From the IMG/VR virus record IMGVR_UViG_3300029258_003221, positions 170,632-234,631 of that record: a stretch of DNA of 64,000 bases; one strand, 5' to 3'. Of the stretch, positions 8,756 to 36,437 are shown piece after piece. The notes below the pieces were generated by a model, which saw nothing but the letters and a program-made list of their open reading frames with translations, was not told where the DNA came from and did not search any database. The first letter of the stretch is position 1, and the number at the start of each line of letters is the position of its first letter. Position numbers and translations under genes: made by a program.

Positions 8756-9163
8756 TCATGAAACGATCTCCTGAACTCGTCTACCTGAAACAAGGTAGTC
8801 TTTCTTGTAGTAACGGACATACTGTCGTCGGTTATGACGAACACGCTGGTCTGCAATTTTGATGAGTGATTGCAGTTCGTTGATTCTATCTGAATCAATT
8901 TCAAACTCAATATGACAACCACCCATCATCAAACCAGAAGTTGCCTCAACTCGTATGCCATGTTCTTTAAGAACTTCATCCCGAAACATGGCTTCCAGCA
9001 TGTTGTCAACTGATTCAGTAGTGGGTGTTCTTGTTTTGGCAATACGATCACCTTGGAATGATGAACCAAGCTCCGTATACACCACATCCACGTCGGATTC
9101 AGGCCAAATCACATGCAGCTTGAAACCGATGTTGCCGAGTGTTGTTTGAACTGGTTTAGTCAT
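8756..9163 (-). CDS. hypothetical protein
   Basis: ATGA overlap start at 9163. Confidence 0.75.
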   Translation of the reverse strand: MTKPVQTTLGNIGFKLHVIWPESDVDVVYTELGSSFQGDRIAKTRTPTTESVDNMLEAMFRDEVLKEHGIRVEATSGLMMGGCHIEFEIDSDRINELQSLIKIADQRVRHNRRQYVRYYKKDYLVSGRRVQEIVS

Positions 9164-9750
9164 GCTGCGAAATCCAATGGGAAGTAGTATCGATGACAAG
9201 GATTGCCCCAGTCAAACCTCTGACGAGGGAGTTTGTATTTAGCTTTCAGCTTCCTGAACAACACTTTGTTGGGCGCTGTCCTCATGTTAGACAGATAAAA
9301 CTTCATGCCTTTGTTGCGATAGTATTCCGCAGCATAAAGCAACATCTGTTCCGCCAGTCCCTGACGACGAAATGGCTCATCGACACTGATGAATTCTTCA
9401 AAAGGTTTGTCCACGAAAAAATTCTGGAATGAACGAAAGTCATCTTGATGATGTTTGTTCATGTAAGCTAATGCTTCTTCACGGGACAGTTCCTTCCTGT
9501 GGTTAATCCATCCCCAGTATTCCGGCTTTCCACTTTCAAACTTTTCGACAGCACCACACCAGCCATTGACCTTATCCAAAAAGCTGACAATTCCAAGAGG
9601 ATAAAACTTGGGAATGTTCTCGTGAGGAATGTATGAGCACTTCAGATAGGCAATTTCTTCACCTTCATGGTGAACACTAACCCGATCCACAACCCAACCT
9701 CGATTGGGACGTTCTGTATCAAGTTTTATTGAGAAGTCATACATCAACAT
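9160..9750 (-). CDS. GNAT-family acetyltransferase
   Basis: motif A FISVDEPFRRQGLAEQML; LFRKL helix. Confidence 0.65.
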   Translation of the reverse strand: MLMYDFSIKLDTERPNRGWVVDRVSVHHEGEEIAYLKCSYIPHENIPKFYPLGIVSFLDKVNGWCGAVEKFESGKPEYWGWINHRKELSREEALAYMNKHHQDDFRSFQNFFVDKPFEEFISVDEPFRRQGLAEQMLLYAAEYYRNKGMKFYLSNMRTAPNKVLFRKLKAKYKLPRQRFDWGNPCHRYYFPLDFAA

Positions 9751-17117: not shown

Positions 17118-17855
17118 TTACGATTCTTCATCAGGTGTCTCATTTGGACCTTCCAGCTTCCCCTGATCATCGACATGAGGAAGCAGGAATTGCTCCAACT
17201 GATCTTTCAGGGCCTCAAGACCGAGTGCTTCAACCTTGCTGGTAAAGAACCCTTCAACCTCACCTTTTGCTTCAGTTACAGTTCGATCAATCGCCTCATT
17301 GAACTGACTCTGAATGAAAGGAACAGTTGATCGCAGCTTAGAGACAACAGCACCAACCATTCTGCGAAGTTCTTCTTTGTCTGCCTTCTTGATGGTGCCT
17401 TTTCGCTCCAGCAATTCAGCAATCTGAACCTCAAGTTCCATGGCCTGTTGTGTTGCTTCCTTAACGGTTGCGTCAAACTCGTCCTCGAATTTCTTACGCT
17501 GATTGGTGTCAGGACAATCATCAATCTTTTCACCATTCAGCCGATGAATGGTGCAGGGGATTCCATCTCCCATGTTGGGAGAGGTAATCAGGTCAATCAA
17601 CTGAGTGCCACTGATCAGCACTTCAATGTGAGGGTTCCGTTCGCCATAGTACCTGTCACTATTGAGATTTCGATACTTTGATGCAGGACGAATGGTCAGG
17701 CTGAAGACATTGGAGTGAGGAATAGACGATCCGAAAAGAATCGTTCCACCGGGATGAGTCTGGCGATTCAGACCGATCATCCCATAACATGGATGAGTCT
17801 CTTTAACACCCAACACATCAGCGTCTTCCTGAACCGGATCAATCTTGTTCGCCAT
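17118..17855 (-). CDS. conserved large-phage hypothetical protein
   Basis: HPCYGMIG...LFGSSIPH...NMGDGIPCTI motif pattern; C-terminal coiled coil. Confidence 0.8.
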   Translation of the reverse strand: MANKIDPVQEDADVLGVKETHPCYGMIGLNRQTHPGGTILFGSSIPHSNVFSLTIRPASKYRNLNSDRYYGERNPHIEVLISGTQLIDLITSPNMGDGIPCTIHRLNGEKIDDCPDTNQRKKFEDEFDATVKEATQQAMELEVQIAELLERKGTIKKADKEELRRMVGAVVSKLRSTVPFIQSQFNEAIDRTVTEAKGEVEGFFTSKVEALGLEALKDQLEQFLLPHVDDQGKLEGPNETPDEES

Positions 17856-19353
17856 CGCTATCATCACCTTCCTGATAACAAGCCCCAATGGACTCATAAA
17901 TCAAATCTTTGTTGTTTTGGATATGTTCCTTGGCCAGATCGTAATCTTCCGAGAAAACATCGTAAAAATGACTAACAAAGTAATTCAAAGCTGTTGGTGC
18001 CATCAGTCGATCTGATGTGAAACACGTTTCCACAACCTTCGTAGCCCAATCGACTACAGCATCTTCTTGGGTGTCTGAAAGTTTATGAGGGCATGAACCA
18101 GCAGGAGCGAGCACAAAATATGTCCCTCTGGTGGGACGTGGCACCCCTGCATTCAACGGGTCAGGCCGATCATAAATGTTCGGTTCGTGATTTTCTTCAG
18201 ATTCACTGCGTCTACGTCGCTTCTTGACCTTGGTTTCAATACCAAGTCGTTCAGCCTGTTTAGCAGCAGTCTGTGCTTTGAGTGGACGTGGCTGGAGATT
18301 CTTGGCCCAGTCTGTCTCCTCAATAGCAGCCCACAATTCACTCTGCCTGTTGAATTCCTGCTTGCTCTCAAGGTCATTGACAACCTGCTGAAACTCATCT
18401 TTGTCAACTTCGACTTTGGTGATGCCTTTGGTGCCTTTTGTCTTGACTTCAATGCCAAGTTCTCGGGCACGCTGATAAGCTACACCAGCAGTCAAAGGAC
18501 GTGGCTTGAGGTTCTTGGCCCAATCTGTTTCTTCAACTGCTTTCCAAAGACTTGAAAGCTTTTTGAATTCACGCTTGCTTTCAAGATCATTGACAACCTT
18601 CTGAAACTCATCTTTGTCAATGACGAGTTTTTCTTTAACGCCTCTGCCCTTGGAACTTTTGGTTTTGGTTTCAATGCCAAGTTCTCGGGCACGCTGATAA
18701 GCCACACCAGCAGTCAAAGGACGTGGCTTGAGGTTCTTGGCCCAATCAGAGTCTTCAACGGCCTGCCAAAGATCTGAAGCTTTGGTAAAGCTATGCTTAT
18801 CTTCCAGATCGTTGACGACCTGCTGAAACTCATCTTTATCGAGGACCAATTTTTGTTTTCCCCGACCAGCACCACCTTTACCTTTGGCACTTTTGGTTTT
18901 GGTTTCAATATCAAGCTCTCTTGCTCTCTGAATAGCAACGGCAACAGTCAACGGACGTGGCTGGAGATTCTTCGCCCAGTCTGTTTCTTCAACTGCTTTC
19001 CAAAGATCTGAAAGCCTTGTGAATTCCTGTTTGTCTTCCAGATCATTGACAACCTTCTGGAATTCATCTTTGTCGATGACGAGTTTTTGCCTTCCACGAG
19101 ACATGGAGTTTTTATTCTCGCCATTTCTCGGCTTAGCACTTTTGGTTTTAATCTCAATGCCAAGCTCCTGTGCTCGTTGAGAAGCAACAGAAGCAGTCAA
19201 CGGACGTGGCTCAAGATTTTTAGCCCAGTCTGTTCCTTCAACTGCTTTCCAGAGTTTGGAGAGCGTAGAAAAATTCTCAGACGATTCCAGATCACTGACG
19301 ACTTTCTGAAATTCATCTTTGTCAATAACCAGTTTTTGTCTTCCACGAGCCAT
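17839..19353 (-). CDS. protein with five tandem ~73-80-aa repeats plus a unique C-terminal domain; putative nucleic-acid binder
   Basis: repeat KLVIDKDEFQxVVNDLE...LWxAVExTDWAKNLxPRPLT...QRARELGIExKTK with basic linkers. Confidence 0.9.
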   Translation of the reverse strand: MARGRQKLVIDKDEFQKVVSDLESSENFSTLSKLWKAVEGTDWAKNLEPRPLTASVASQRAQELGIEIKTKSAKPRNGENKNSMSRGRQKLVIDKDEFQKVVNDLEDKQEFTRLSDLWKAVEETDWAKNLQPRPLTVAVAIQRARELDIETKTKSAKGKGGAGRGKQKLVLDKDEFQQVVNDLEDKHSFTKASDLWQAVEDSDWAKNLKPRPLTAGVAYQRARELGIETKTKSSKGRGVKEKLVIDKDEFQKVVNDLESKREFKKLSSLWKAVEETDWAKNLKPRPLTAGVAYQRARELGIEVKTKGTKGITKVEVDKDEFQQVVNDLESKQEFNRQSELWAAIEETDWAKNLQPRPLKAQTAAKQAERLGIETKVKKRRRRSESEENHEPNIYDRPDPLNAGVPRPTRGTYFVLAPAGSCPHKLSDTQEDAVVDWATKVVETCFTSDRLMAPTALNYFVSHFYDVFSEDYDLAKEHIQNNKDLIYESIGACYQEGDDSDGEQD

Positions 19354-19364
19354 GGTGTTTTTCC

Positions 19365-19592
19365 TCAAATTGGAAAGTCATTGAATTCAGAACGAGTTTC
19401 ATCCTGAACATCAAGAACTTCAATGTGATTGTGACCTGTTGATTCAATACAGATGCAAGTGCCATCAGTGAATCGAATGTTCAAACAATTTGATGACCGA
19501 TCAGTAGCTTCAATTGTTTTCCCTTCAAGGAAATCAATGGTGTCTGAACTGTACGGAACCATCTTGTATTTGTAAAATTCTGAGGGTTTCAT
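19365..19592 (-). CDS. hypothetical protein
   Basis: 75-aa ORF. Confidence 0.7.
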   Translation of the reverse strand: MKPSEFYKYKMVPYSSDTIDFLEGKTIEATDRSSNCLNIRFTDGTCICIESTGHNHIEVLDVQDETRSEFNDFPI

Positions 19593-19670
19593 TTAAGCTT
19601 CCTGATGACCACATGAATTACAGAAACCATCATCATCACAACTGGTCAAATGTTGATTTGATGTGCGACA

Positions 19671-19850
19671 TTAACTAATGTCCATGTAGCTGTCACAACC
19701 GGTTTCTTCCTCTGCCTGTGTTCTGAGAAAATCCTCAAAGGCAGAGTCAGAGTTTTGGTTTTCGATATACTGAAGACACAGTGACAGCTTAGAACTGTCA
19801 TTCCAGCCCTGTTCTTCGCCGATCTCATCAAGAATTGTTTCAGCGGACAT
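19671..19850 (-). CDS. hypothetical protein (below ORF-track cutoff)
   Basis: AGGA SD; MSAETILDEIGEEQGWND..., 59 aa. Confidence 0.7.
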   Translation of the reverse strand: MSAETILDEIGEEQGWNDSSKLSLCLQYIENQNSDSAFEDFLRTQAEEETGCDSYMDIS

Positions 19851-21425: not shown

Positions 21426-21762
21426 TAGATTTCTCCGACCAAGGATGAGGGGAATCAAAATGCCTTTCCCACCATTCCTTACCACGAATATCAAAGCCAA
21501 GGATGCTGTTGTCGTCCAAAACAACCTGTGCTTCTTCACAAAGTTCAACGAGCGATTCGTATTCCTCAACAAGTTGTTTGCCAATATCATCGGCAATTAA
21601 AGACTTGTCTTTCTCTGTTGCCTTCATGAAGGGTGTCAACTCTTTGATTCGATGGCGTGCAAATCCAGTAAAGCTACGGAGACTTGATTTGTCCCCGTAG
21701 CCTTCATTGGTGCCATTGCGAACACTGTCAATTCGATAGCGAAGTTCTTCAGGCATTGTCAT
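21415..21762 (-). CDS. hypothetical protein
   Basis: start set at ATG 21762. Confidence 0.7.
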   Translation of the reverse strand: MTMPEELRYRIDSVRNGTNEGYGDKSSLRSFTGFARHRIKELTPFMKATEKDKSLIADDIGKQLVEEYESLVELCEEAQVVLDDNSILGFDIRGKEWWERHFDSPHPWSEKSNDN

Positions 21763-21925
21763 AGCAAGGTTCTTTGACATCCTGAAGCTCCTTTCTCATA
21801 ACAGTTACATTCTTTGGTGCTTCAATGCCAATTTTTACCTGACTGTTTGTTGATCGAATCACAGTGATGACAATATCATCACCAATGACGATCCTTTCTC
21901 CGGCTTTTCTTGAAAGAACGAGCAT
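21749..21925 (-). CDS. csrA: carbon storage regulator CsrA
   Basis: MLVLSRKAGERIVIGDDIVITVI...QVKIGIEAPKNVTVMRKEL; AAGGAG SD. Confidence 0.95.
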   Translation of the reverse strand: MLVLSRKAGERIVIGDDIVITVIRSTNSQVKIGIEAPKNVTVMRKELQDVKEPCYDNA

Positions 21926-21958
21926 TTGTGATCTCCTTATCCAAAGGAAGTTGTTCAC

Positions 21959-21991
21959 CAAAAAATAAGGCCCGGTTTTGACGCCGGGCCT
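21959..21991 (-). terminator. intrinsic terminator
   Basis: AGGCCCGG/CCGGGCCT stem followed by T-run on minus strand. Confidence 0.75.
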
Positions 21992-22077
21992 CTGATGCGA
22001 TGGGCAAAGTTCCAATCCATCGCACATGACCCTATTTATGCTTCAGTCAGCCAACTTATCGGCTTTACAACCAAAAG

Positions 22078-26531: not shown

Positions 26532-26903
26532 TCAATAAAAAAGTACAGCAATCAGAACCATGACAATGCAACCAAAAAAACAAACAGAAAACACCATTTT
26601 TGAATCAGAGTCTATTTCAAACTTAGAAACTGTTTCAGAATTAAACGAAGCTGTTTGGTAGCCTCTTTCCAAAAGCTGTTTGAATTTTATCGTGCGAATT
26701 TCTTCTTCTGGAATTCGAGAAATGATATGAGCATTGTGTGCTGGTGCGTCCCAGTCAGGAACAGGTGACCAAAGTTGAGTTTTTAAATAAATGTCCCACC
26801 AAGGATATTCAAATGGATCATAATCAGTGAGATCTTCAGGAACTTCAATCAATGCTGCTTCAGCATGAGGCACCAATAATTCCGGGTGCGTGATCATTGT
26901 CAC
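26532..26903 (-). CDS. hypothetical protein with C-terminal membrane anchor
   Basis: hydrophobic C-terminus VFSVCFFGCIVMVLIAVLFY. Confidence 0.7.
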   Translation of the reverse strand: MTMITHPELLVPHAEAALIEVPEDLTDYDPFEYPWWDIYLKTQLWSPVPDWDAPAHNAHIISRIPEEEIRTIKFKQLLERGYQTASFNSETVSKFEIDSDSKMVFSVCFFGCIVMVLIAVLFY

Positions 26904-27499
26904 TCCTTAGTAGGTGTAACAACACGAACTCCCTTCCGGGTTGAATGGTAGTAAATTGATTCTGCAAATTCCTTTGCTGTGTAGTCTGTGAAAGTGCCCC
27001 CTGCTTTCTGTAAAAAATTCCTTGCCATGGTTAAACTCGGCATTGGTTCAGTACCTTCAGTCTCAGTGGCAAGAATACAAACGATTTCCCATTCACAATC
27101 AGTAGATCGCTCACCGCCATTTTCCACAAGGGCCTTAGCACTGTAACAAACGATTTCACAGAACTTAGCAGGTGTCCCCGTGAAACCAAGTGCCTTTGCA
27201 TCATCAAGGGTGATGTATGTTTCAATATACGGATCTTCCCCTTTCTGTCGATAGGTCACCCGTGCTTGAACAGGCATTCCTTCCCGAAGGGGCATACTTG
27301 GAGGACAGAAAAACCCATCAGCTTCAATAGGCACAAGCACCTTTCGGTGTATGCCAGTTTCACCTGTACCGGGAATTCTCTTATCGAAATTCTGCTGAAT
27401 TCGATCAATGACTTCATCTTCTGAGATAGTGAAGTAAGAATGACCTGAACTCGGCTGATGTCGATCACGAGCAAATTGTGACCATCCGATAGTTTGCAT
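26900..27499 (-). CDS. DUF3228-like protein
   Basis: VCYSAKAL...EWEIVCI...EPMPSLTMARNFL..AGGT resembles the DUF3228 pattern. Confidence 0.55.
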   Translation of the reverse strand: MQTIGWSQFARDRHQPSSGHSYFTISEDEVIDRIQQNFDKRIPGTGETGIHRKVLVPIEADGFFCPPSMPLREGMPVQARVTYRQKGEDPYIETYITLDDAKALGFTGTPAKFCEIVCYSAKALVENGGERSTDCEWEIVCILATETEGTEPMPSLTMARNFLQKAGGTFTDYTAKEFAESIYYHSTRKGVRVVTPTKE

Positions 27500-29906: not shown

Positions 29907-30262
29907 TATGATACCTCTTTTAACTCCGACCAATCAATACCCAAAAGTGCAAAGTTCTGAGTATTGTTTTGATTGTAATCCAAATACAAACGAGCAGCTT
30001 TCATCATGAAGACTTGAAGTCCGATCAAATCCACTGGATCATCACCGAAAACTTCTACTTCAACTGGTGCTACAAACTTACGAGGTGTCCCATTTGGATT
30101 GATGATTTCTTTTAAATCGATAGTTCTTGGATCTGAAATGAGCATTGCGTCGTCTTCATTCATAGACCAACCATGACCAGTCCAAAACTCATTTTCATTT
30201 GCTGCAAGAATGAATCGACGATGCTGCAAACTTCCTTTAGGGACCAAAGACAGTGATTTCAT
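29906..30262 (-). CDS. hypothetical protein
   Basis: 118-aa ORF. Confidence 0.75.
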   Translation of the reverse strand: MKSLSLVPKGSLQHRRFILAANENEFWTGHGWSMNEDDAMLISDPRTIDLKEIINPNGTPRKFVAPVEVEVFGDDPVDLIGLQVFMMKAARLYLDYNQNNTQNFALLGIDWSELKEVS

Positions 30263-31761
30263 ATGTTGTTCCTTCTTTCAAATCTTGATGCGAAACCATG
30301 GAATTTCTCTGGTTGGTCGAGTGCCAGACGCTTGAGCTTAGCTCCCAGAGAGCAACACTCCTCGTGAAAATCATCTGTTGCATGATTTTTCACCTTGTCA
30401 TGTGCAAGCTCATGAATAATAAGCCCGTCAAGACGAGGCGTGAAGCCTTCTTCAAAGAACTTGTTGCCCATGGTGAACTTGTTGTAGTCCAGCACATTAT
30501 CGCCATAACAGGCAATCCATGATCTGCCAACAAAACTATGACACATCACAAACCGAACAATGATACCATGGTCCAGCAATTCTGAACCCAACCATCGAGT
30601 GTATTCCTCGATTAAACCCATAGCAGGTGTCCACTTTTCCCTTGGGATCACTTCCACTGGGGTTGCATTTGGGTCATCACTGTACGCTCCTTTGCCCTCC
30701 ATGGGAAAAGCCTGAGAACTGCTGAAAAGGGCACCTGCCATCTTGGCATTAGCTCGCTGACCTTTTGTCAGTCCATGTGACGAAATCATATTGTATCCAG
30801 CCGTAATGGCTGCACCGTTTGCATCCGGGTTAGTTGGGTCAATCGATACCCTCTTAGGCCCAAACCGTTTAGTCATAAACGAATGTGTGGCCTCATCTGA
30901 ACACCGTTCATCACTGGACGCTTCATTGACCCAAGCTTCAGTGGTATCATCCTGTTCAATTTTTTCATGCATTTCATTGAGCACATGAGTACGAACAGCT
31001 TTAAGATAAGAAGGGGTCACATTGTCACGATCTACATTCAGAGGAACTTTCTGCTGAATGCTGTAATGCCATTTATCCCCAGTTTCTACAACCGGAATAC
31101 CCAATTCATAGAGACTCGGCACCTCATCAGGAAGAACATCAAAAATCTGAATTTCACACTTTCGTGCAGATGTACGAAGATCTTCACCGATCTCAGTGAA
31201 AAGAGTTTGCTCAAAAGTGTGAATTGGCTTTCTGCCTTTGATTTCATCACCATTAACAAACAGTTTTAGACCGGGACGAACAATGATTTTGTTCATGTAC
31301 TCAATAAGTTCAGTGTACTGCTGACGAGTACATTCCATGAGTGCCCAGAACTCTGTTCCATTGTCTCGCTTCCGACGAGGGTATTCATGTCGCCCTTCAT
31401 CATTGAATTCAACTGTGCCGCTTGTTGTGTGAACACGAGCTTCTTTGCAGAAAGCCAGAGCCATCTTACAGCCGACATTGAACCGACCAGCTTTAGTAGG
31501 ATCATCTTTCTTCTCAGATGGAGCATAGACTGTCCAAGCATGAGACAGATCAGTGTAACCCGGACCATTGTCAATGACGCTGATTTCAATCAATGGCTTT
31601 CCGGGGATTATCGCCACCTTGATATGACATTCAGTTGCCTCTGTGTCCATGACGTTTTGATAAAGTTCTGCCCCGATGATCCCAAAAGAACGTCTTTCAA
31701 CGAGTCGCTTGGCGACCATACGAAGACCATCTTTGTGTGCCGTAAACCAATTCTTACTCAT
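30259..31761 (-). CDS. GHKL (Hsp90/MutL/MORC-like) ATPase fused to C-terminal HExxH domain
   Basis: ELYQNVMD, IDNGPG, GRFNVG motifs; IIHELAH near the C-terminus. Confidence 0.8.
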   Translation of the reverse strand: MSKNWFTAHKDGLRMVAKRLVERRSFGIIGAELYQNVMDTEATECHIKVAIIPGKPLIEISVIDNGPGYTDLSHAWTVYAPSEKKDDPTKAGRFNVGCKMALAFCKEARVHTTSGTVEFNDEGRHEYPRRKRDNGTEFWALMECTRQQYTELIEYMNKIIVRPGLKLFVNGDEIKGRKPIHTFEQTLFTEIGEDLRTSARKCEIQIFDVLPDEVPSLYELGIPVVETGDKWHYSIQQKVPLNVDRDNVTPSYLKAVRTHVLNEMHEKIEQDDTTEAWVNEASSDERCSDEATHSFMTKRFGPKRVSIDPTNPDANGAAITAGYNMISSHGLTKGQRANAKMAGALFSSSQAFPMEGKGAYSDDPNATPVEVIPREKWTPAMGLIEEYTRWLGSELLDHGIIVRFVMCHSFVGRSWIACYGDNVLDYNKFTMGNKFFEEGFTPRLDGLIIHELAHDKVKNHATDDFHEECCSLGAKLKRLALDQPEKFHGFASRFERRNNI

Positions 31762-32134
31762 TTTCAATCCTTTTCCAATCATCTGGACCTAATGCCTTGA
31801 TTTCTTCAAGCAGTGTCAACACTTGTTCGTTGACGCTTTTGTAACATCCGGTGTCATGTTTCCACTCAAAGATACACATTCCATACACTGTGGAACAATG
31901 ACCTTCCTCATCAATTGAACCTATGACATATGGATGAATCTTAATTGATCCGACATACAAAATATCATAGGGTTCTCCGATACACAGCATCAATCTTTTA
32001 ATGTATCTCAGAGCGTCCATGACCACATCATTCAATTCATCAGAATTTGTGGCGTAGAGCTGATCAAATGATCTCCCACGAAGCCCCATATCTGTTTGAT
32101 GCACAGCCTCAACGCTGAGTTCGTATGTGTTCAT
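31754..32134 (-). CDS. hypothetical protein
   Basis: 126-aa ORF. Confidence 0.7.
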   Translation of the reverse strand: MNTYELSVEAVHQTDMGLRGRSFDQLYATNSDELNDVVMDALRYIKRLMLCIGEPYDILYVGSIKIHPYVIGSIDEEGHCSTVYGMCIFEWKHDTGCYKSVNEQVLTLLEEIKALGPDDWKRIENE

Positions 32135-32872: not shown

Positions 32873-34033
32873 TCATGCAGAATGTTTGGCGTATCGCCGC
32901 TCATCCATATATTCTGCTGTCACCTGATCACCGGCATGTTCAATGCCACGTCGATCCAGTTCGGCAAGCCCCGCTCTTGTTAGTGTGATACCACGACTGG
33001 TAGATACAACATACGGACCATTGCCTGCAACAGACATCAATGGAGGCAGAATCACACGCTCTAACGCCTCTGCCTTACAGTTTGCCACTCTTTGGAGATT
33101 ATCCTTGGAGATTGGACGACTGCCCAATGCTTCAAGAATCTTGACTTCTCGACGGTCCATGCCGAACTCATCAAGTCCCAGATTGTCAGCAACGATTCTG
33201 GCAGCAGTCTGCCAATCATTGCCGTGCTGATTTTTAGTCATCTCCATAAGTCGAGCGAAATCCTTCGCCAAACGAGGAACAATTCGATATTTGGCAACTG
33301 CGTTACACGCTTCTTCGGAGAAGTGCGGGTAATTAAGCTTGATGATCTGAGCGATCTCTTTCTTACCAGCAGGTTGCCATCTCAAAGTTGTACCCAATCG
33401 CTGTGCGAAAGCATCGAACAACTTACCTTCCTCAGTGGTAGCACCGACCCAACAAATTTCTCGGCAGTCCACTTTGAAAGTTCTAGTTTTCTTTCCTGTG
33501 CCGGTCGTGATCTTCATCCAACCGTCACCATACTCCATGCCGTTCAGAAGACCACCCTGCATGAGTGATTTACTTAAAGCATGTGCCTCATCAAAGAACA
33601 GAATACACGGAGGAATCTGATACTCATCTTTGGCAACTTCAACGATCTTGATGCCCTTCTTAGCAAAGGTTTCACAGATCAATTGAAACAAGTTGTAGGT
33701 GCTGGAAAGAGCATCCGCCTGTACAAAGACAAACGGAATACCAATAGTTTCGGCAAACTGCCGAACAATAAAAGTCTTACCTTGGCCAGATGTCGCATAA
33801 ATTGCAAATGACATCCCACGACAACTGTGATTCGGAAGACCAAATGCGTTGAATGCAAATGTCTTGAGGGTGCTCATATTACCCTCATTTTCCTTACTCA
33901 CAATTACTTTGTTGAGTGGACATTTTGGATGAGCCAAGGCTTCACGGATTTCTTCATCAGTTGGCCTATCTGGAAAGCCGCCCGGATTGAAGAACTGAAT
34001 TTGAAGCTGCTTAGCATATTTTTTCATTAACAT
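32873..34033 (-). CDS. ruvB: RuvB-like AAA+ ATPase
   Basis: Walker A ATSGQGKT, Walker B FFDEAH, VGATTEEGKL, PRLA, GLDEFGMD...E.VILPPL...TSRG winged-helix tail; start uncertain. Confidence 0.75.
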   Translation of the reverse strand: MLMKKYAKQLQIQFFNPGGFPDRPTDEEIREALAHPKCPLNKVIVSKENEGNMSTLKTFAFNAFGLPNHSCRGMSFAIYATSGQGKTFIVRQFAETIGIPFVFVQADALSSTYNLFQLICETFAKKGIKIVEVAKDEYQIPPCILFFDEAHALSKSLMQGGLLNGMEYGDGWMKITTGTGKKTRTFKVDCREICWVGATTEEGKLFDAFAQRLGTTLRWQPAGKKEIAQIIKLNYPHFSEEACNAVAKYRIVPRLAKDFARLMEMTKNQHGNDWQTAARIVADNLGLDEFGMDRREVKILEALGSRPISKDNLQRVANCKAEALERVILPPLMSVAGNGPYVVSTSRGITLTRAGLAELDRRGIEHAGDQVTAEYMDERRYAKHSA

Positions 34034-34089
34034 CCCTTTCTGTCGTTGAAACTTTCTTGTTACGACTTTGATGGGTGTCAACTATAGAT

Positions 34090-34983
34090 TTAGGCCACTT
34101 TCTCCTTAGCAAACACGTCTTTCACTTTTTTCAGTGCTCGATCATAGGCGTAAGTTGATGCCATGCGGCTCACAGAATGCTTCTTGGATACTTCTGATTT
34201 TTTGCCGCCACCCAGAACAGTATAAAGAACATCACGCTCCAGTTCTGACAAACCGACTTCTTCAATCACAGCTCGGACCTGATCGATTTCCATGGTCACT
34301 TCGCCATCGAAACTGCTGTAACTGTAACTTGATACAAAATCTTCCCAAGCTACCTCTGGCCCATCAACTGCCACGGCTAACGCTGAAAAGCATTCTTCAC
34401 GATCAGAATCATTGATCTCCAGTTTATTTGCGGCCTGCTCAAAAGAAAGACCTTTAGACATAAGGTCTCGCAGATCTGGGAGCATACGAAGAATTCGTTT
34501 TTTGACGCTTGAAAGGAAATGATCAGTGCGAATGTAATCGATCATTCGATTCCGAATGGCATTACAGGAATATGTATCAAATTTCGCATTGCCGCTATAG
34601 GCAAACATCGAATCGGAGATTGCCCAAATCCCCTCTTGAATGAAATCTTCAATATCGACAGCACGATGACGTAATCTGTGTGCTTTGTAGAAAGGCAGAA
34701 CAATACCGGGCACAAGGCGACAATAACCCTGAAGGACAGGATACTCAATTTCTTTGACAGAGTCCATCGTCTGTTTGACGTAATCTGTCAAAGTCTGAAG
34801 AGTTCCATTGTGATATCTACGCCGAAACTCTTTGATAGAGGGATTTTCGGTGTCAAATTCTTTTTCTGCCGCCGCACGAATAATTGGCTGTGCGTCAGCC
34901 ATAATTGAAGAATATTTCTGTTCTTCTTCTTCTGAGAGAGTACGAGGTTTAATACACCCAATCATGAGGAGATTCCCTTTCAT
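34090..34983 (-). CDS. sigma-70 family sigma factor
   Basis: region 2 EDFIQEGIWAI...KFDTYSCNAIRNRMIDYIR; region 4 LSELERDVL...SEVSK...ALKKVK. Confidence 0.8.
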   Translation of the reverse strand: MKGNLLMIGCIKPRTLSEEEEQKYSSIMADAQPIIRAAAEKEFDTENPSIKEFRRRYHNGTLQTLTDYVKQTMDSVKEIEYPVLQGYCRLVPGIVLPFYKAHRLRHRAVDIEDFIQEGIWAISDSMFAYSGNAKFDTYSCNAIRNRMIDYIRTDHFLSSVKKRILRMLPDLRDLMSKGLSFEQAANKLEINDSDREECFSALAVAVDGPEVAWEDFVSSYSYSSFDGEVTMEIDQVRAVIEEVGLSELERDVLYTVLGGGKKSEVSKKHSVSRMASTYAYDRALKKVKDVFAKEKVA

Positions 34984-35112
34984 CGATTACGGAAGTTATT
35001 TTCTTGATGGGTGTCTGACATGACAAACGCTGGCCATGTTCACATGGATCACCACATTCATAGAAAACTGTCTTCGAGTCGATTTACAGGGTGTCCTCTT
35101 TTGCACCAAATA

Positions 35113-35147
35113 GAAAAAGCCGCCAACCAGTTTCCCAGTAGACGACT
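35113..35147 (-). terminator. intrinsic terminator
   Basis: AGTCGTC/GGCGGCT G-U-containing stem, GAAA loop, T5 run. Confidence 0.6.
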
Positions 35148-35169
35148 TTTTCTCGGGGTGACGTTCCCT

Positions 35170-36363
35170 TTATTTCTTACGAACCCGAAGAGTTTTCGCT
35201 TCTTCCGCCTGAATCCTTTTTTCGGATTCTTCGCAAGCCTGTTCATACGTGATGTTCATACAGGCTGCCACACCTTTGCGGAATTCAGCATTGTCTTCAT
35301 CTGTCTGGTCGAACAATTTTTGCATTTCCTTGAGCGGAATCGGTTTCGCACGAGTTGATTGGCGTGCAGTTGATTCGCTGTAATGCTGCTCACCCAGAGC
35401 TTTTCGTGTAGCAGCAGTTAAGGTCATGCGACCAGATTCCAAATCAGCCCGGTCTTTATCTGTAAGACCAGTTGCTGGTTTGATGACTTCACCTGTTTCT
35501 TCGTCGATCCTTGCTTCTTTTCGAGGACGAAGCAGAGCCTCACGGTTTCTGACCGTGCCTTTCTTCTTCTGTCCGGGATAAAGATACTCAGCAATTTCTG
35601 TTAGGGTCCACTTCTTACCAGAAGCAGGATTGATTCTGGATCGGAAGTTTTTGTAGATCGCCGCTTCCTGAAGAGCAGTCAATCGTTTGTTGCTGAGATT
35701 TTCTTCGACTGAAATCAGGAAGCCTTCATCATCATTCACCTGTTTATTGGTGGCGATGACTTCTGCTGGATAAATTTTGGCACCTTCAACTTCATCCGCA
35801 ACATCAACACGACTTTTTGCGTGGTTGTACAAAGTTGCTGATGTTCGTCGATTTCCTGCCAACAGAGTGAAGTTGTAATTACCATCACTCAGTTTATTGC
35901 CTTTACGCACCATTACCGGATGGAACTGCCCATAACGGGCAAGACGACGTGCAAATGCAACAATAGATGAAGCAGGTGGGGTCACCTGTTTGGAATCTTC
36001 GTCCTCTACCGTTGCCACGTCCAGTTCCATTGGCTCACATTCATGTGTTTCAAACAGACTGACAACTTGTCGAACCACTTCAATGTCTTCTGACAGAGCC
36101 ATGTGGATCAGTGAATGTTCTTTGTCTGAAGAATCAACCAGCTTGTAACCAAGAGCAAACAGATTTTCTGGTTCATTCCGACAGTTATCCACTGCTGTGA
36201 TTCTTGACAGTGGAATCGTCCAATGGTCAATTTTGACCTGCTTGGCCTTTGGACGATTGTCAGATTTCTTTGTTCTTGTCTTAGCTGGCTTCTTCGTTTC
36301 GTCAGCTTGTTGGGTGTCAACAACTGTTTCTTCAGCAGGAGCTTCAGCGGTTTCGGCAGCCAT
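35170..36363 (-). CDS. ParB/Srx-family (ParB-like CTPase) protein with HTH
   Basis: GQFHPVMV...LLAGNRR (GxRR) and VEENLSNKRLTALQEAAIY...TLTEIAEYL; GGAG SD before ATG 36363. Confidence 0.8.
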   Translation of the reverse strand: MAAETAEAPAEETVVDTQQADETKKPAKTRTKKSDNRPKAKQVKIDHWTIPLSRITAVDNCRNEPENLFALGYKLVDSSDKEHSLIHMALSEDIEVVRQVVSLFETHECEPMELDVATVEDEDSKQVTPPASSIVAFARRLARYGQFHPVMVRKGNKLSDGNYNFTLLAGNRRTSATLYNHAKSRVDVADEVEGAKIYPAEVIATNKQVNDDEGFLISVEENLSNKRLTALQEAAIYKNFRSRINPASGKKWTLTEIAEYLYPGQKKKGTVRNREALLRPRKEARIDEETGEVIKPATGLTDKDRADLESGRMTLTAATRKALGEQHYSESTARQSTRAKPIPLKEMQKLFDQTDEDNAEFRKGVAACMNITYEQACEESEKRIQAEEAKTLRVRKK

Positions 36364-36418
36364 TGCGGCAAATCTCCATGAGATGTTTTGATGAAAACTA
36401 CACAGTGCCACAAAAAAC

Positions 36419-36437
36419 GACACACCGTGTCACACGG
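36419..36437. promoter_or_regulatory. overlapping inverted repeats at the ParB-like gene transcription start (candidate operator)
   Basis: GACAC-ACC-GTGTC (36419-36431) and CCGTGT-C-ACACGG (36425-36437), immediately downstream of the -10. Confidence 0.55.

What the first reader, a model, noticed from the sequence alone, without database searches (positions are those of the whole stretch)
17839..19353. Five-repeat protein with an unrecognised ~75-aa module and basic linkers
Seen: five tandem modules (conserved W..V...DWAKNL.PRPL...A..RA.ELGI) joined by K/R/G-rich linkers. Repeats 3 and 4 share a ~77-bp near-identical stretch, which suggests recent gene conversion. I do not recognise the module. 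Inference: a multivalent DNA/RNA-binding array. It lies mid-way in the GACACCC domain, so it is a second candidate reader of the motif or a genome-coating protein.
Basis: partly seen in the sequence, partly recalled or inferred. Interest (0 to 1): 0.6.

Follow-up and report, generated by a model that had tools for sequence, protein, structure and literature searches.

The report
Five-module DNA-tether protein, huge phage
A gene of an uncultivated huge phage encodes five tandem copies of a small, uncatalogued helical domain joined by basic linkers and ending in a second uncatalogued domain; both domains are widespread in metagenomic phage-like DNA, most likely tether something to DNA, and show no link to the GACACCC motif.

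Summary
Window 17839-19353 (-) encodes a 504-aa protein with five tandem ~75-aa modules, K/R/G-rich linkers and a 76/77-nt tract shared by repeats 3 and 4.

The window is the end of a 234.6-kb fragment (44% complete) of a huge phage. Neither domain is in Pfam, NCBIfam, PADLOC or PDB sequences. PHROGs gave only short, weak matches to families of unknown function. A profile search found 797 clusters, all metagenomic. The usual form is one module plus a variable tail; arrays of 2-5 modules are rare and arose at least twice.

AlphaFold gives a confident four-helix module. Its only structural neighbours are DNA-binding HTH/Myb/winged-helix domains, and those matches are weak (Z ≤ 5.1). In relatives the CTD sits behind basic zinc-ribbon arrays, or in front of canonical AT-hooks, instead of behind modules. 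This is the best evidence for a modular DNA tether.

The "GACACCC reader" idea is not supported. Relatives with near-identical modules use a different one-strand word (GGACC) or none. "Genome-coating" is not supported either: the protein has pI 6.6 and acidic module cores. In five relatives the gene directly follows a RuvB-like AAA+ gene, but not in this window. Function remains inferred.

The parts
17839..19353 (-). Whole gene, 504 aa (P0003). ATG at 19353 with a GAGGA ribosome-binding site; stop codon at 17839-17841.
19108..19353 (-). Module 1 (residues 1-82) with N-terminal basic arm MARGRQ and basic linker 1.
18862..19104 (-). Module 2 (residues 84-164) with linker 2. This is the module that was folded: four helices, pLDDT about 90 in the core.
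18634..18861 (-). Module 3 (residues 165-240). Contains the 77-nt tract 18671-18747, which is 76/77 identical to a tract in module 4.
18418..18633 (-). Module 4 (residues 241-312). Contains the matching tract 18449-18525. It is the only module with a basic core (net +3).
18190..18417 (-). Module 5 (residues 313-388), the most divergent, followed by the KKRRRR linker.
17872..18180 (-). C-terminal domain (residues ~392-494) with the conserved signature PxGxCPxKL...W. AlphaFold pLDDT is 89.5. No match to a known fold.
17842..17871 (-). Acidic C-terminal tail, EGDDSDGEQD.
32873..34081 (-). Context only. RuvB-like AAA+ ATPase. In five relatives its orthologue lies immediately upstream of the module gene; here it lies 13.5 kb upstream. 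A functional link is inferred, not shown.
34090..36423 (-). Context only. Sigma-70-like gene (34090-34983) and ParB_N-like gene (35170-36423). Together with the AAA+ gene they form the block conserved in relatives.

Best explanation
The gene encodes a modular DNA tether of an uncultivated huge phage.

Each of the five ~65-aa four-helix modules is flanked by Lys/Arg/Gly-rich arms. Across the family the N-terminal arm reads M-G/A-R-x-K and the tail after the module reads K-T-x-x-G-K-R-G-R(-P). I infer that the arms contact the DNA backbone or minor groove in the manner of AT-hooks. I infer that the helical core adds a helix-turn-helix-type contact. Five units on short linkers would then hold one contiguous stretch of duplex DNA with high avidity and low sequence specificity.

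The conserved C-terminal domain and the acidic tail would be the business end that the array positions on DNA. They are probably a protein-interaction surface. One candidate partner is the phage's RuvB-like AAA+ ATPase.

The array grew by internal tandem duplication of the middle module, and it is still being homogenised by gene conversion.

Shown here: the repeats, their selection and history, the size of the family, the architectures and the predicted folds. Inferred: nucleic-acid binding, its mode, and the role of the C-terminal domain.
For: - Repeats are real and under purifying selection: dN/dS between modules is 0.08-0.37.
- Large family: 797 clusters at E ≤ 1e-3 and 307 at E ≤ 1e-10. 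Among the best 150, 62 have one module plus another tail, 46 have one module plus the CTD, 21 have the CTD without a module, and 23 have 2-5 modules.
- Exchangeable tethers: the CTD is preceded by 1-5 modules or by 1-4 basic UPF0547 zinc ribbons of the form GRGRKxCPxC. In P0090 and P0112 it is instead followed by canonical AT-hooks, KRGRPPK and KKRGRKPK.
- Charge pattern over 149 modules: N-arm +1.9, core -1.4, tail +3.4. The tail consensus is KTxxGKRGR.
- Module model: pLDDT 83.8. The best structural rows are all DNA-binding: the R2 Myb domain (Z 5.1), AhrC/ArgR N-terminal domains, Myb/SANT, GT-1, Zeste, TRF1 and MntR. Atlas neighbours are HTH domains of transposases, recombinases and HNH endonucleases.
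- Module tree: modules 2-4 of the window protein form one clade (98/87). Modules 2-4 of the other five-module protein, P0010 on a 622-kb contig, fall elsewhere.
- Synteny: in five relatives the gene starts 6-22 nt after a RuvB-like AAA+ gene. A RuvB-family gene lies 2.7 kb from a distant one-module+CTD gene.
Against: - No binding was measured.
- All structural matches are weak: Z ≤ 5.1 and Foldseek E > 1. They could reflect only a common small helical arrangement.
- Module cores are acidic in 77% of cases and the whole protein has pI 6.6. This is unusual for a non-specific DNA binder.
- The window's linkers carry RGR or GRG but lack the Pro of a canonical AT-hook, and the protein does not hit Pfam AT_hook.
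- The WAK and PRP loop motif is specific to this clade and is not conserved across the family.
- Adjacency to the AAA+ gene is lost in the window (13.5 kb) and absent near three remote CTD genes.
Confidence: 0.5

Rival explanations
1. The protein is the sequence-specific reader of the one-strand GACACC(C) word that fills this part of the genome.
For: The gene lies inside the motif domain, which has 36 copies in the window, all on the - strand, against 5.3 expected. The whole record has 118 copies on one strand and none on the other. The protein is multivalent. One copy of the motif lies inside the gene, at 18069-18075.
Against: - Relatives whose modules have the same helix 4 (VAYQRA.EL) use a different word: GGACC occurs 48:0, 34:0, 25:0, 23:0 and 27:2 on the two strands.
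- The window itself has no GGACC bias, 26:25.
- LR756511.1 and a 159-kb IMG/VR phage carry modules 57-61% identical but show no GACACCC excess.
- Loci of remote family members show no outstanding one-strand word.
- Motif copies are 250-1000 bp apart and not clustered at the ~10-bp pitch that a short-linker array would need.
Confidence: 0.06
2. The protein is a RuvA-like adaptor. The module array binds DNA, possibly branched DNA, and the C-terminal domain loads or targets the phage's RuvB-like AAA+ motor.
For: - The gene sits 6-22 nt downstream of the AAA+ gene in five relatives that share 34-62% identity with the window protein, or lack a listed figure.
- The AAA+ protein's best PDB and NCBIfam hits are RuvB, at E 1.7e-10 and 4.6e-19, covering the lid and winged-helix regions.
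- No RuvA_N domain is found in the held genome.
- A genuine RuvB-family gene lies near a distant family member.
Against: - The adjacency is broken by 13.5 kb in the window.
- No AAA+ gene lies within 6 kb of the remote CTD gene on the 70-kb contig; the other two remote contigs are only 5.6 and 2.2 kb long and show none either.
- The synteny may be inherited gene order, because the whole block HNH...ParB-sigma-AAA-X...SprT is shared.
- The AAA+ protein scores far below the RuvB equivalog cut-off (68 against 282 bits).
- There is no sequence or fold similarity to RuvA.
- The genome is only 44% complete.
Confidence: 0.15
3. The protein binds RNA rather than DNA. RG/RGG-like linkers together with small helical domains would hold phage or host RNA.
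For: The linkers carry RGR, GRGK and KGRG. Genes close by in relatives encode T4-type RNA ligase and NYN nuclease. A phage CsrA gene lies 2.4 kb upstream in the window.
Against: The domains that replace the module in homologues include canonical AT-hooks of the RGRP type, which are DNA minor-groove motifs. The structural neighbours are DNA binders. No RNA-binding fold was recovered.
Confidence: 0.12
4. The protein does not bind nucleic acid. The acidic modules would be protein-binding units, forming a scaffold, decoy or DNA mimic against a host factor, and the basic linkers would be mere spacers.
For: Module cores are acidic (mean net -1.4; 77% are ≤ 0) and the tail is acidic. No significant match to any DNA-binding family was found. 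The gene lies among small genes of unknown function, typical of host-takeover regions.
Against: The basic arms are conserved across the family (KTxxGKRGR), which does not fit a mere spacer. The module array is exchanged for zinc ribbons and AT-hooks in homologues.
Confidence: 0.15

Closest known systems
Tandem Myb/SANT/homeodomain-like helical DNA-binding repeats (for example c-Myb R1-R3, the TRF/TEBP telomere binders, the Myb domain of the R2 retrotransposon)
   Same: Arrays of 50-70-aa helical domains on short linkers. These are the top structural neighbours of the module: 8ibw Z 5.1, 2yum Z 4.7, 1mbg Z 4.0, 1w0t Z 3.9.
   Different: There is no sequence similarity. The Z scores are low. The module has four helices, an acidic core and conserved basic arms. 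It occurs in metagenomic, phage-like DNA only and is usually a single copy.
AT-hook proteins (HMGA; Pfam PF02178)
   Same: Short K/R/G-rich segments between or after folded parts. The family's tail consensus is GKRGR(P). Some homologues carry true RGRP hooks. Like HMGA, the protein has an acidic tail.
   Different: The window's linkers lack the Pro of the RGRP core and do not hit PF02178. Here the hooks flank folded domains.
RuvA, the DNA-binding adaptor of the RuvB motor
   Same: About 200 aa in the one-module form. A DNA-binding N-terminal part is followed by a flexible linker and a small C-terminal domain. The gene is adjacent to a RuvB-like AAA+ gene in five relatives.
   Different: There is no sequence or fold similarity. 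The gene order is reversed compared with bacterial ruvA-ruvB (own knowledge). The adjacency is not kept in the window. The complex test gave no verdict.
UPF0547 zinc-ribbon arrays (PF10571) in homologues that carry the same C-terminal domain
   Same: They occupy the same position and also occur in variable numbers (1-4), in front of the same C-terminal domain, each preceded by GRGRK.
   Different: The fold is unrelated (a Cys4 ribbon). Their function is also unknown.

Membership tests
Any curated protein family (Pfam-A, NCBIfam, PADLOC, PHROGs) | A profile match above the curated or a significant threshold | tested here: not met
   Pfam: no hit over its cut-off, and the best hits are chance-level repeats of short matches. 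NCBIfam and PADLOC: none. PHROGs: only short matches of about 35 aa to families of unknown function (phrog_31379 at E 1.1e-6, phrog_18239, phrog_18403).
Helix-turn-helix / Myb-like / winged-helix DNA-binding domains | Fold match to a solved member that stands clearly above background | tested here: inconclusive
   The best Z is 5.1 and the top 50 rows are mostly DNA binders, but Z below 8 can be a common arrangement. Foldseek against PDB and BFVD gave E > 1. Atlas TM scores were 0.40-0.53.
AT-hook (PF02178) | An R-G-R-P core flanked by basic residues | tested here: not met
   The window's linkers have RGR (SRGRQK, ARGRQK), GRGK and KGRGV without Pro, and the protein does not hit PF02178. The core is met in some homologues: P0090 with KRGRPPK (Pfam AT_hook E 0.27), P0112 with KKRGRKPK (no Pfam hit, seen by eye), and one member at E 1e-4.
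RuvA | RuvA_N OB domain, HhH motifs and a RuvB-binding domain III | tested here: not met
   PF01330 has no match in the held genome, while the control genomes were positive. No RuvA chain appears among the PDB sequence or fold hits.
RuvA-like adaptor (functional analogy only) | Physical contact between the C-terminal domain and the RuvB-like AAA+ protein | tested here: inconclusive
   Complex prediction gave no verdict. That result is not evidence for or against binding.
H-NS/Lsr2-type nucleoid-associated silencers | An oligomerisation domain plus a C-terminal domain with a Q/RGR minor-groove loop | not tested
   This resemblance is recalled from memory only: a loop of K-P-R-P-L-T between two helices. 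No such chain is in the top 50 fold rows, and the loop is not conserved across the family.

The most novel reading that the evidence does not exclude
The C-terminal domain, tethered to DNA by interchangeable small units (modules, zinc ribbons or AT-hooks), is a new accessory factor of a DNA-tracking or priming machine in huge phages. The machine could be the RuvB-like AAA+ ATPase or a primase. The strictly one-strand words of this clade (GACACC here, GGACC in relatives) would then be the signals that orient that machine. Three weak fold rows link the C-terminal domain to primase helper bundles. The complements of both words contain GTC, the T7-type primase trinucleotide (own knowledge).
Probability: 0.06. 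Interest if true: 0.85.

Novelty: new variant of a known kind. Interest (0 to 1): 0.5.

Why it matters
Two confidently folding domains, found in at least 797 sequence clusters of metagenomic DNA, much of it phage-like, have no entry in Pfam, NCBIfam or the PDB, and no named function in PHROGs.

Their architectures look like a toolkit. One conserved C-terminal domain is hung on exchangeable, copy-number-variable basic units. In two separate huge-phage lineages the array has expanded to five units. If these are DNA tethers, they would be a new family of phage chromatin or DNA-transaction factors. They would also offer a compact natural scaffold for multivalent DNA binding.

The work also separates this gene from the GACACC one-strand word, which remains a separate and striking puzzle.

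Tried and rejected
- Sequence searches of the protein and of domain profiles against PDB: nothing below E 0.8.
- Foldseek of both models against PDB, and of the module against BFVD: no row with E ≤ 1.
- VIA-align wide: best Z 5.1 for the module and 4.9 for the CTD.
- ESM Atlas by features and by shape: no usable hit.
- Complex prediction of the window's AAA+ protein with the CTD: no verdict, score 0.00. This is not evidence either way.
- Word search with one module: no hit, because of the length filter.
The narrow alignment A1 found one IMG/VR locus.
- tblastn against 50,697 phage records: the module occurs only in the uncultured 595-kb phage LR756511.1. No cultured phage carries it at that sensitivity.
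- Megablast of 8 kb around the gene against the phage records: no match.
- Literature searches for the motif, the domain or the gene block: nothing relevant.
- Sequencing runs: only DNA runs kept as contigs hold the gene. No RNA run holds it, so expression could not be assessed, and contigs cannot show rare repeat-number variants.
- Small terminase was considered because of its size and N-terminal DNA-binding layout. It was dropped: nothing supports it, and the gene lies among early-type genes.
Full report
1. THE OBSERVATION

The - strand ORF 17839..19368 starts at a TTG. An ATG at 19353 lies 8 nt after a GAGGA, so 17839-19353 (504 aa, P0003) is the likely gene. A protein of exactly this length and sequence is on record from the same 234,631-bp contig.

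A direct-repeat search finds five in-register copies of 214 nt, spaced 213-249 nt apart and 64-81% identical to the reference copy. Tandem Repeats Finder reports periods of 234 and 249. A module HMM gives five domains, each with E between 1e-42 and 1e-46.

The linkers are K/R/G-rich with net charge +1 to +5. Four of the five module cores are acidic. The whole protein has pI 6.6.

Repeats 3 and 4 share 76 of 77 nt (18671-18747 and 18449-18525). Their cores are otherwise 81% identical, and no other pair exceeds 68 of 77. Contigs from public runs break at this tract, and a 78-nt unitig there has about double depth. The tract therefore exists twice in the natural population. A partial gene conversion or a recent unequal exchange is the simplest reading.

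dN/dS between modules is 0.08-0.37, so each copy is under purifying selection.

2. WHERE IT SITS

The window is the last 64 kb of an IMG/VR virus record of 234,631 bp that CheckV rates 44% complete. This is a huge phage of roughly half a megabase. Nearly all ORFs of 150 aa or more lie on the - strand, and the window has no tRNA genes. The gene occurs with no listed differences in contigs of sediment and seawater DNA runs from several studies.

Most neighbours have no known family. The exceptions are:
- a phrog_6452 gene that overlaps the 3' end;
- a DUF5662 gene;
- a phage CsrA gene at 21749-22027;
- further upstream, DUF3228 and HATPase_c genes, and further downstream a GNAT gene.

3. RELATIVES AND ARCHITECTURES

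No Pfam, NCBIfam, PADLOC or PDB-sequence match exists for either domain. PHROGs give only short matches to families of unknown function.

The word search found five relatives with three modules and the same CTD (339-347 aa, 34-62% identity), plus one protein with a single module and a different tail. tblastn against phage records and an IMG/VR scan found a 177-178-aa form with one module and a Cys-rich tail. It occurs in the 595-kb uncultured phage LR756511.1 and in a 159-kb IMG/VR contig.

The word search and the family scans had left the protein open, so I ran the exhaustive profile search with the last module plus the CTD. It returned 797 clusters at E ≤ 1e-3, 307 at E ≤ 1e-10 and 18 at E ≤ 1e-30. 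The best 150 divide as follows:

| Architecture | Count |
|---|---|
| One module + another tail | 62 |
| One module + CTD | 46 |
| CTD without a module | 21 |
| 2-5 modules | 23 |

Only P0003 and P0010 have five modules (P0001 is the same window protein read from the TTG). P0010 is 511 aa and lies on a 622-kb contig. Every member looked up is metagenomic and unnamed.

The architectures are the most informative result.
- In CTD-only proteins, the CTD is preceded by 1-4 basic UPF0547 zinc ribbons, each introduced by GRGRK.
- In others, the CTD is followed by canonical AT-hooks (KRGRPPK, KKRGRKPK).
- One protein combines a module, a zinc ribbon and the CTD.
- One module is joined to a stretch that ends in an NPPY motif and resembles Eco57I-type methylases. 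That match is far below threshold (E 0.11).

The same domain is therefore tethered by interchangeable small basic units of variable number.

Across 149 modules the flanks are conserved and basic. The N-arm reads M-G/A-R-x-K and the tail reads K-T-x-x-G-K-R-G-R. Mean net charges are +1.9 for the N-arm, -1.4 for the core and +3.4 for the tail.

4. STRUCTURE

AlphaFold2 with 149 module sequences gives a four-helix domain with pLDDT about 90 in the core and 83.8 overall, and flexible arms. With 78 sequences the CTD gives a small alpha/beta domain with pLDDT 89.5.

Foldseek finds nothing with E below 1 in PDB or BFVD. The exhaustive VIA-align search gives a best Z of 5.1 for the module. The top rows are almost all DNA-binding helical domains: R2 Myb, AhrC/ArgR, Myb/SANT, GT-1, Zeste, TRF1, MntR/IdeR, TetR and GcrA. 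At these Z values that is a hint, not a membership. Atlas neighbours of the module are HTH domains of transposases, recombinases and HNH endonucleases, at TM 0.40-0.53.

The CTD has no convincing neighbour; its best Z is 4.9. Three weak rows point to primase helper bundles. I record this only as a lead.

5. HISTORY OF THE ARRAY

In a maximum-likelihood tree of 40 modules:
- the divergent first modules of six relatives form one clade (100/100);
- several last modules group together (96/86);
- modules 2-4 of the window protein form their own clade (98/87);
- modules 2-4 of P0010 group elsewhere.

The two five-module arrays therefore arose independently by duplication of an internal module. Both arose in phages of half a megabase or more.

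6. THE AAA+ NEIGHBOUR

In five relatives (L004, L006, L007, L008, L014) the gene starts 6-22 nt after a ~390-aa AAA+ gene. That gene is in turn preceded by a sigma-70-like gene and a ParB_N-like gene.

The window has the same block at 32873-36423, but the module gene lies 13.5 kb downstream of it. The AAA+ protein is RuvB-like over its lid and winged-helix parts (PDB E 1.7e-10; NCBIfam RuvB E 4.6e-19). It scores far below the equivalog cut-off.

A true RuvB-family gene lies 2.7 kb from a distant one-module+CTD gene. The loci of three remote CTD genes show no AAA+ gene, although two of those contigs are short. The link may therefore be inherited gene order. The complex prediction gave no verdict.

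7. THE GACACCC QUESTION

The motif is real and striking.
- The window has 36 copies, all on the - strand, against 5.3 expected.
- The whole record has 118 copies on one strand and none on the other.
- The core is the hexamer GACACC, at 62:1 in the window and 55:0 in its first 36.5 kb.

The link to this protein fails the available tests.
- Relatives with the same block and closely similar modules have a different one-strand word, GGACC: 48:0, 34:0, 25:0, 23:0 and 27:2. The window has no GGACC bias.
- Two phages with modules 57-61% identical have no GACACCC excess.
- Loci of remote family members show no outstanding one-strand word.
- The putative recognition helix (VAYQRA.EL) is conserved across these phages.
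- Motif copies lie hundreds of bases apart.

8. VERDICT

The finding is real. It is a newly recognised pair of domains from metagenomic phage DNA, in an unusually expanded five-module form.

The best explanation is a multivalent, low-specificity DNA tether that positions the CTD (confidence 0.5). The rival readings are a RuvA-like adaptor, an RNA binder, a protein scaffold and a motif reader, in the proportions given in the report sections.

Tandem arrays of small DNA-binding units are a known kind, while the domains themselves are uncatalogued. I therefore rate it a new variant of a known kind, with interest 0.5.

Noticed in passing
window 1-36500 (G000 128.8-207 kb); loci L004, L006, L007, L008, L014: The one-strand word is really the hexamer GACACC: 62 on the - strand against 1 on the + strand in the window, and 55:0 in 1-36.5 kb. 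In the whole record GACACCC is 118:0. Its spacing grows from about 250 bp near G000 129 kb to about 1 kb near 207 kb. It stops sharply at 128.8 kb and is almost absent elsewhere, although genes stay on the same strand. Five related huge-phage contigs instead carry GGACC on the coding strand only (48:0, 34:0, 25:0, 23:0, 27:2). The complements of both words contain GTC. The cause is unknown; candidates are a polar signal for a DNA-tracking machine, primase sites, or one-orientation avoidance of Type III restriction.
   Followed up: partly
window 32873-36423 (-): A conserved block of a ParB_N-like gene, a sigma-70-like gene and a RuvB-like AAA+ gene is shared with five huge-phage contigs. The densest part of the GACACC domain begins inside the ParB-like gene: the last closely spaced copy is at 36312-36318.
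   Followed up: partly
window 21749-22027 (-): A phage-encoded CsrA homologue (Pfam CsrA E 2.9e-22; PHROG CsrA-like regulator).
   Followed up: no
L001 5010-5543 (LR756511.1); L003 3998-4534: A second common architecture has one module, a G/R-rich linker and a Cys-rich tail (LKCxEC...C....CPxYPxRP). In both phages it lies shortly downstream of a ~710-aa rIIA-like HATPase gene, after one or two small ORFs. Sixty-two of the best 150 family members carry one module plus a tail other than the CTD, and this Cys-rich tail appears among the examples read.
   Followed up: partly
alignment A8 (one-module+CTD proteins P0016, P0024, P0045, P0063): Many family members end in an acidic tail whose last residue is Phe (EDSESF, EEREYF, LEDEPF, ESIDF). 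This resembles the partner-binding tips of SSB and T7 gp2.5 (own knowledge). The window protein's tail is acidic but has no terminal Phe.
   Followed up: no
window 17872-18180 (C-terminal domain model m4b11cb302ba0): Three independent but weak fold rows point to primase helper helix bundles: RepB' 3h20 at Z 3.8, an Atlas RepB_primase_C cluster at TM 0.50, and an Atlas Prim-Pol cluster at TM 0.38.
   Followed up: no
window 17118-17897 (-): The downstream gene (phrog_6452, unknown function, E 2e-43) overlaps the 3' end of the five-module gene by 17-59 nt, depending on which start is used.
   Followed up: no
window 17500-19700: The gene occurs with no listed differences in contigs of sediment and seawater DNA runs from several studies, so the phage is widespread in marine or sediment samples. 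A low-depth 851-nt contig from a related organism also touches the repeats.
   Followed up: partly
window 26900-27499, 30259-31782 and 9160-9750 (-): The only other recognisable genes nearby are DUF3228 (also found near the remote CTD gene P0092), a 507-aa HATPase_c protein and a GNAT acetyltransferase. The rest of the 13.5 kb between the AAA+ gene and the five-module gene has no family match.
   Followed up: no
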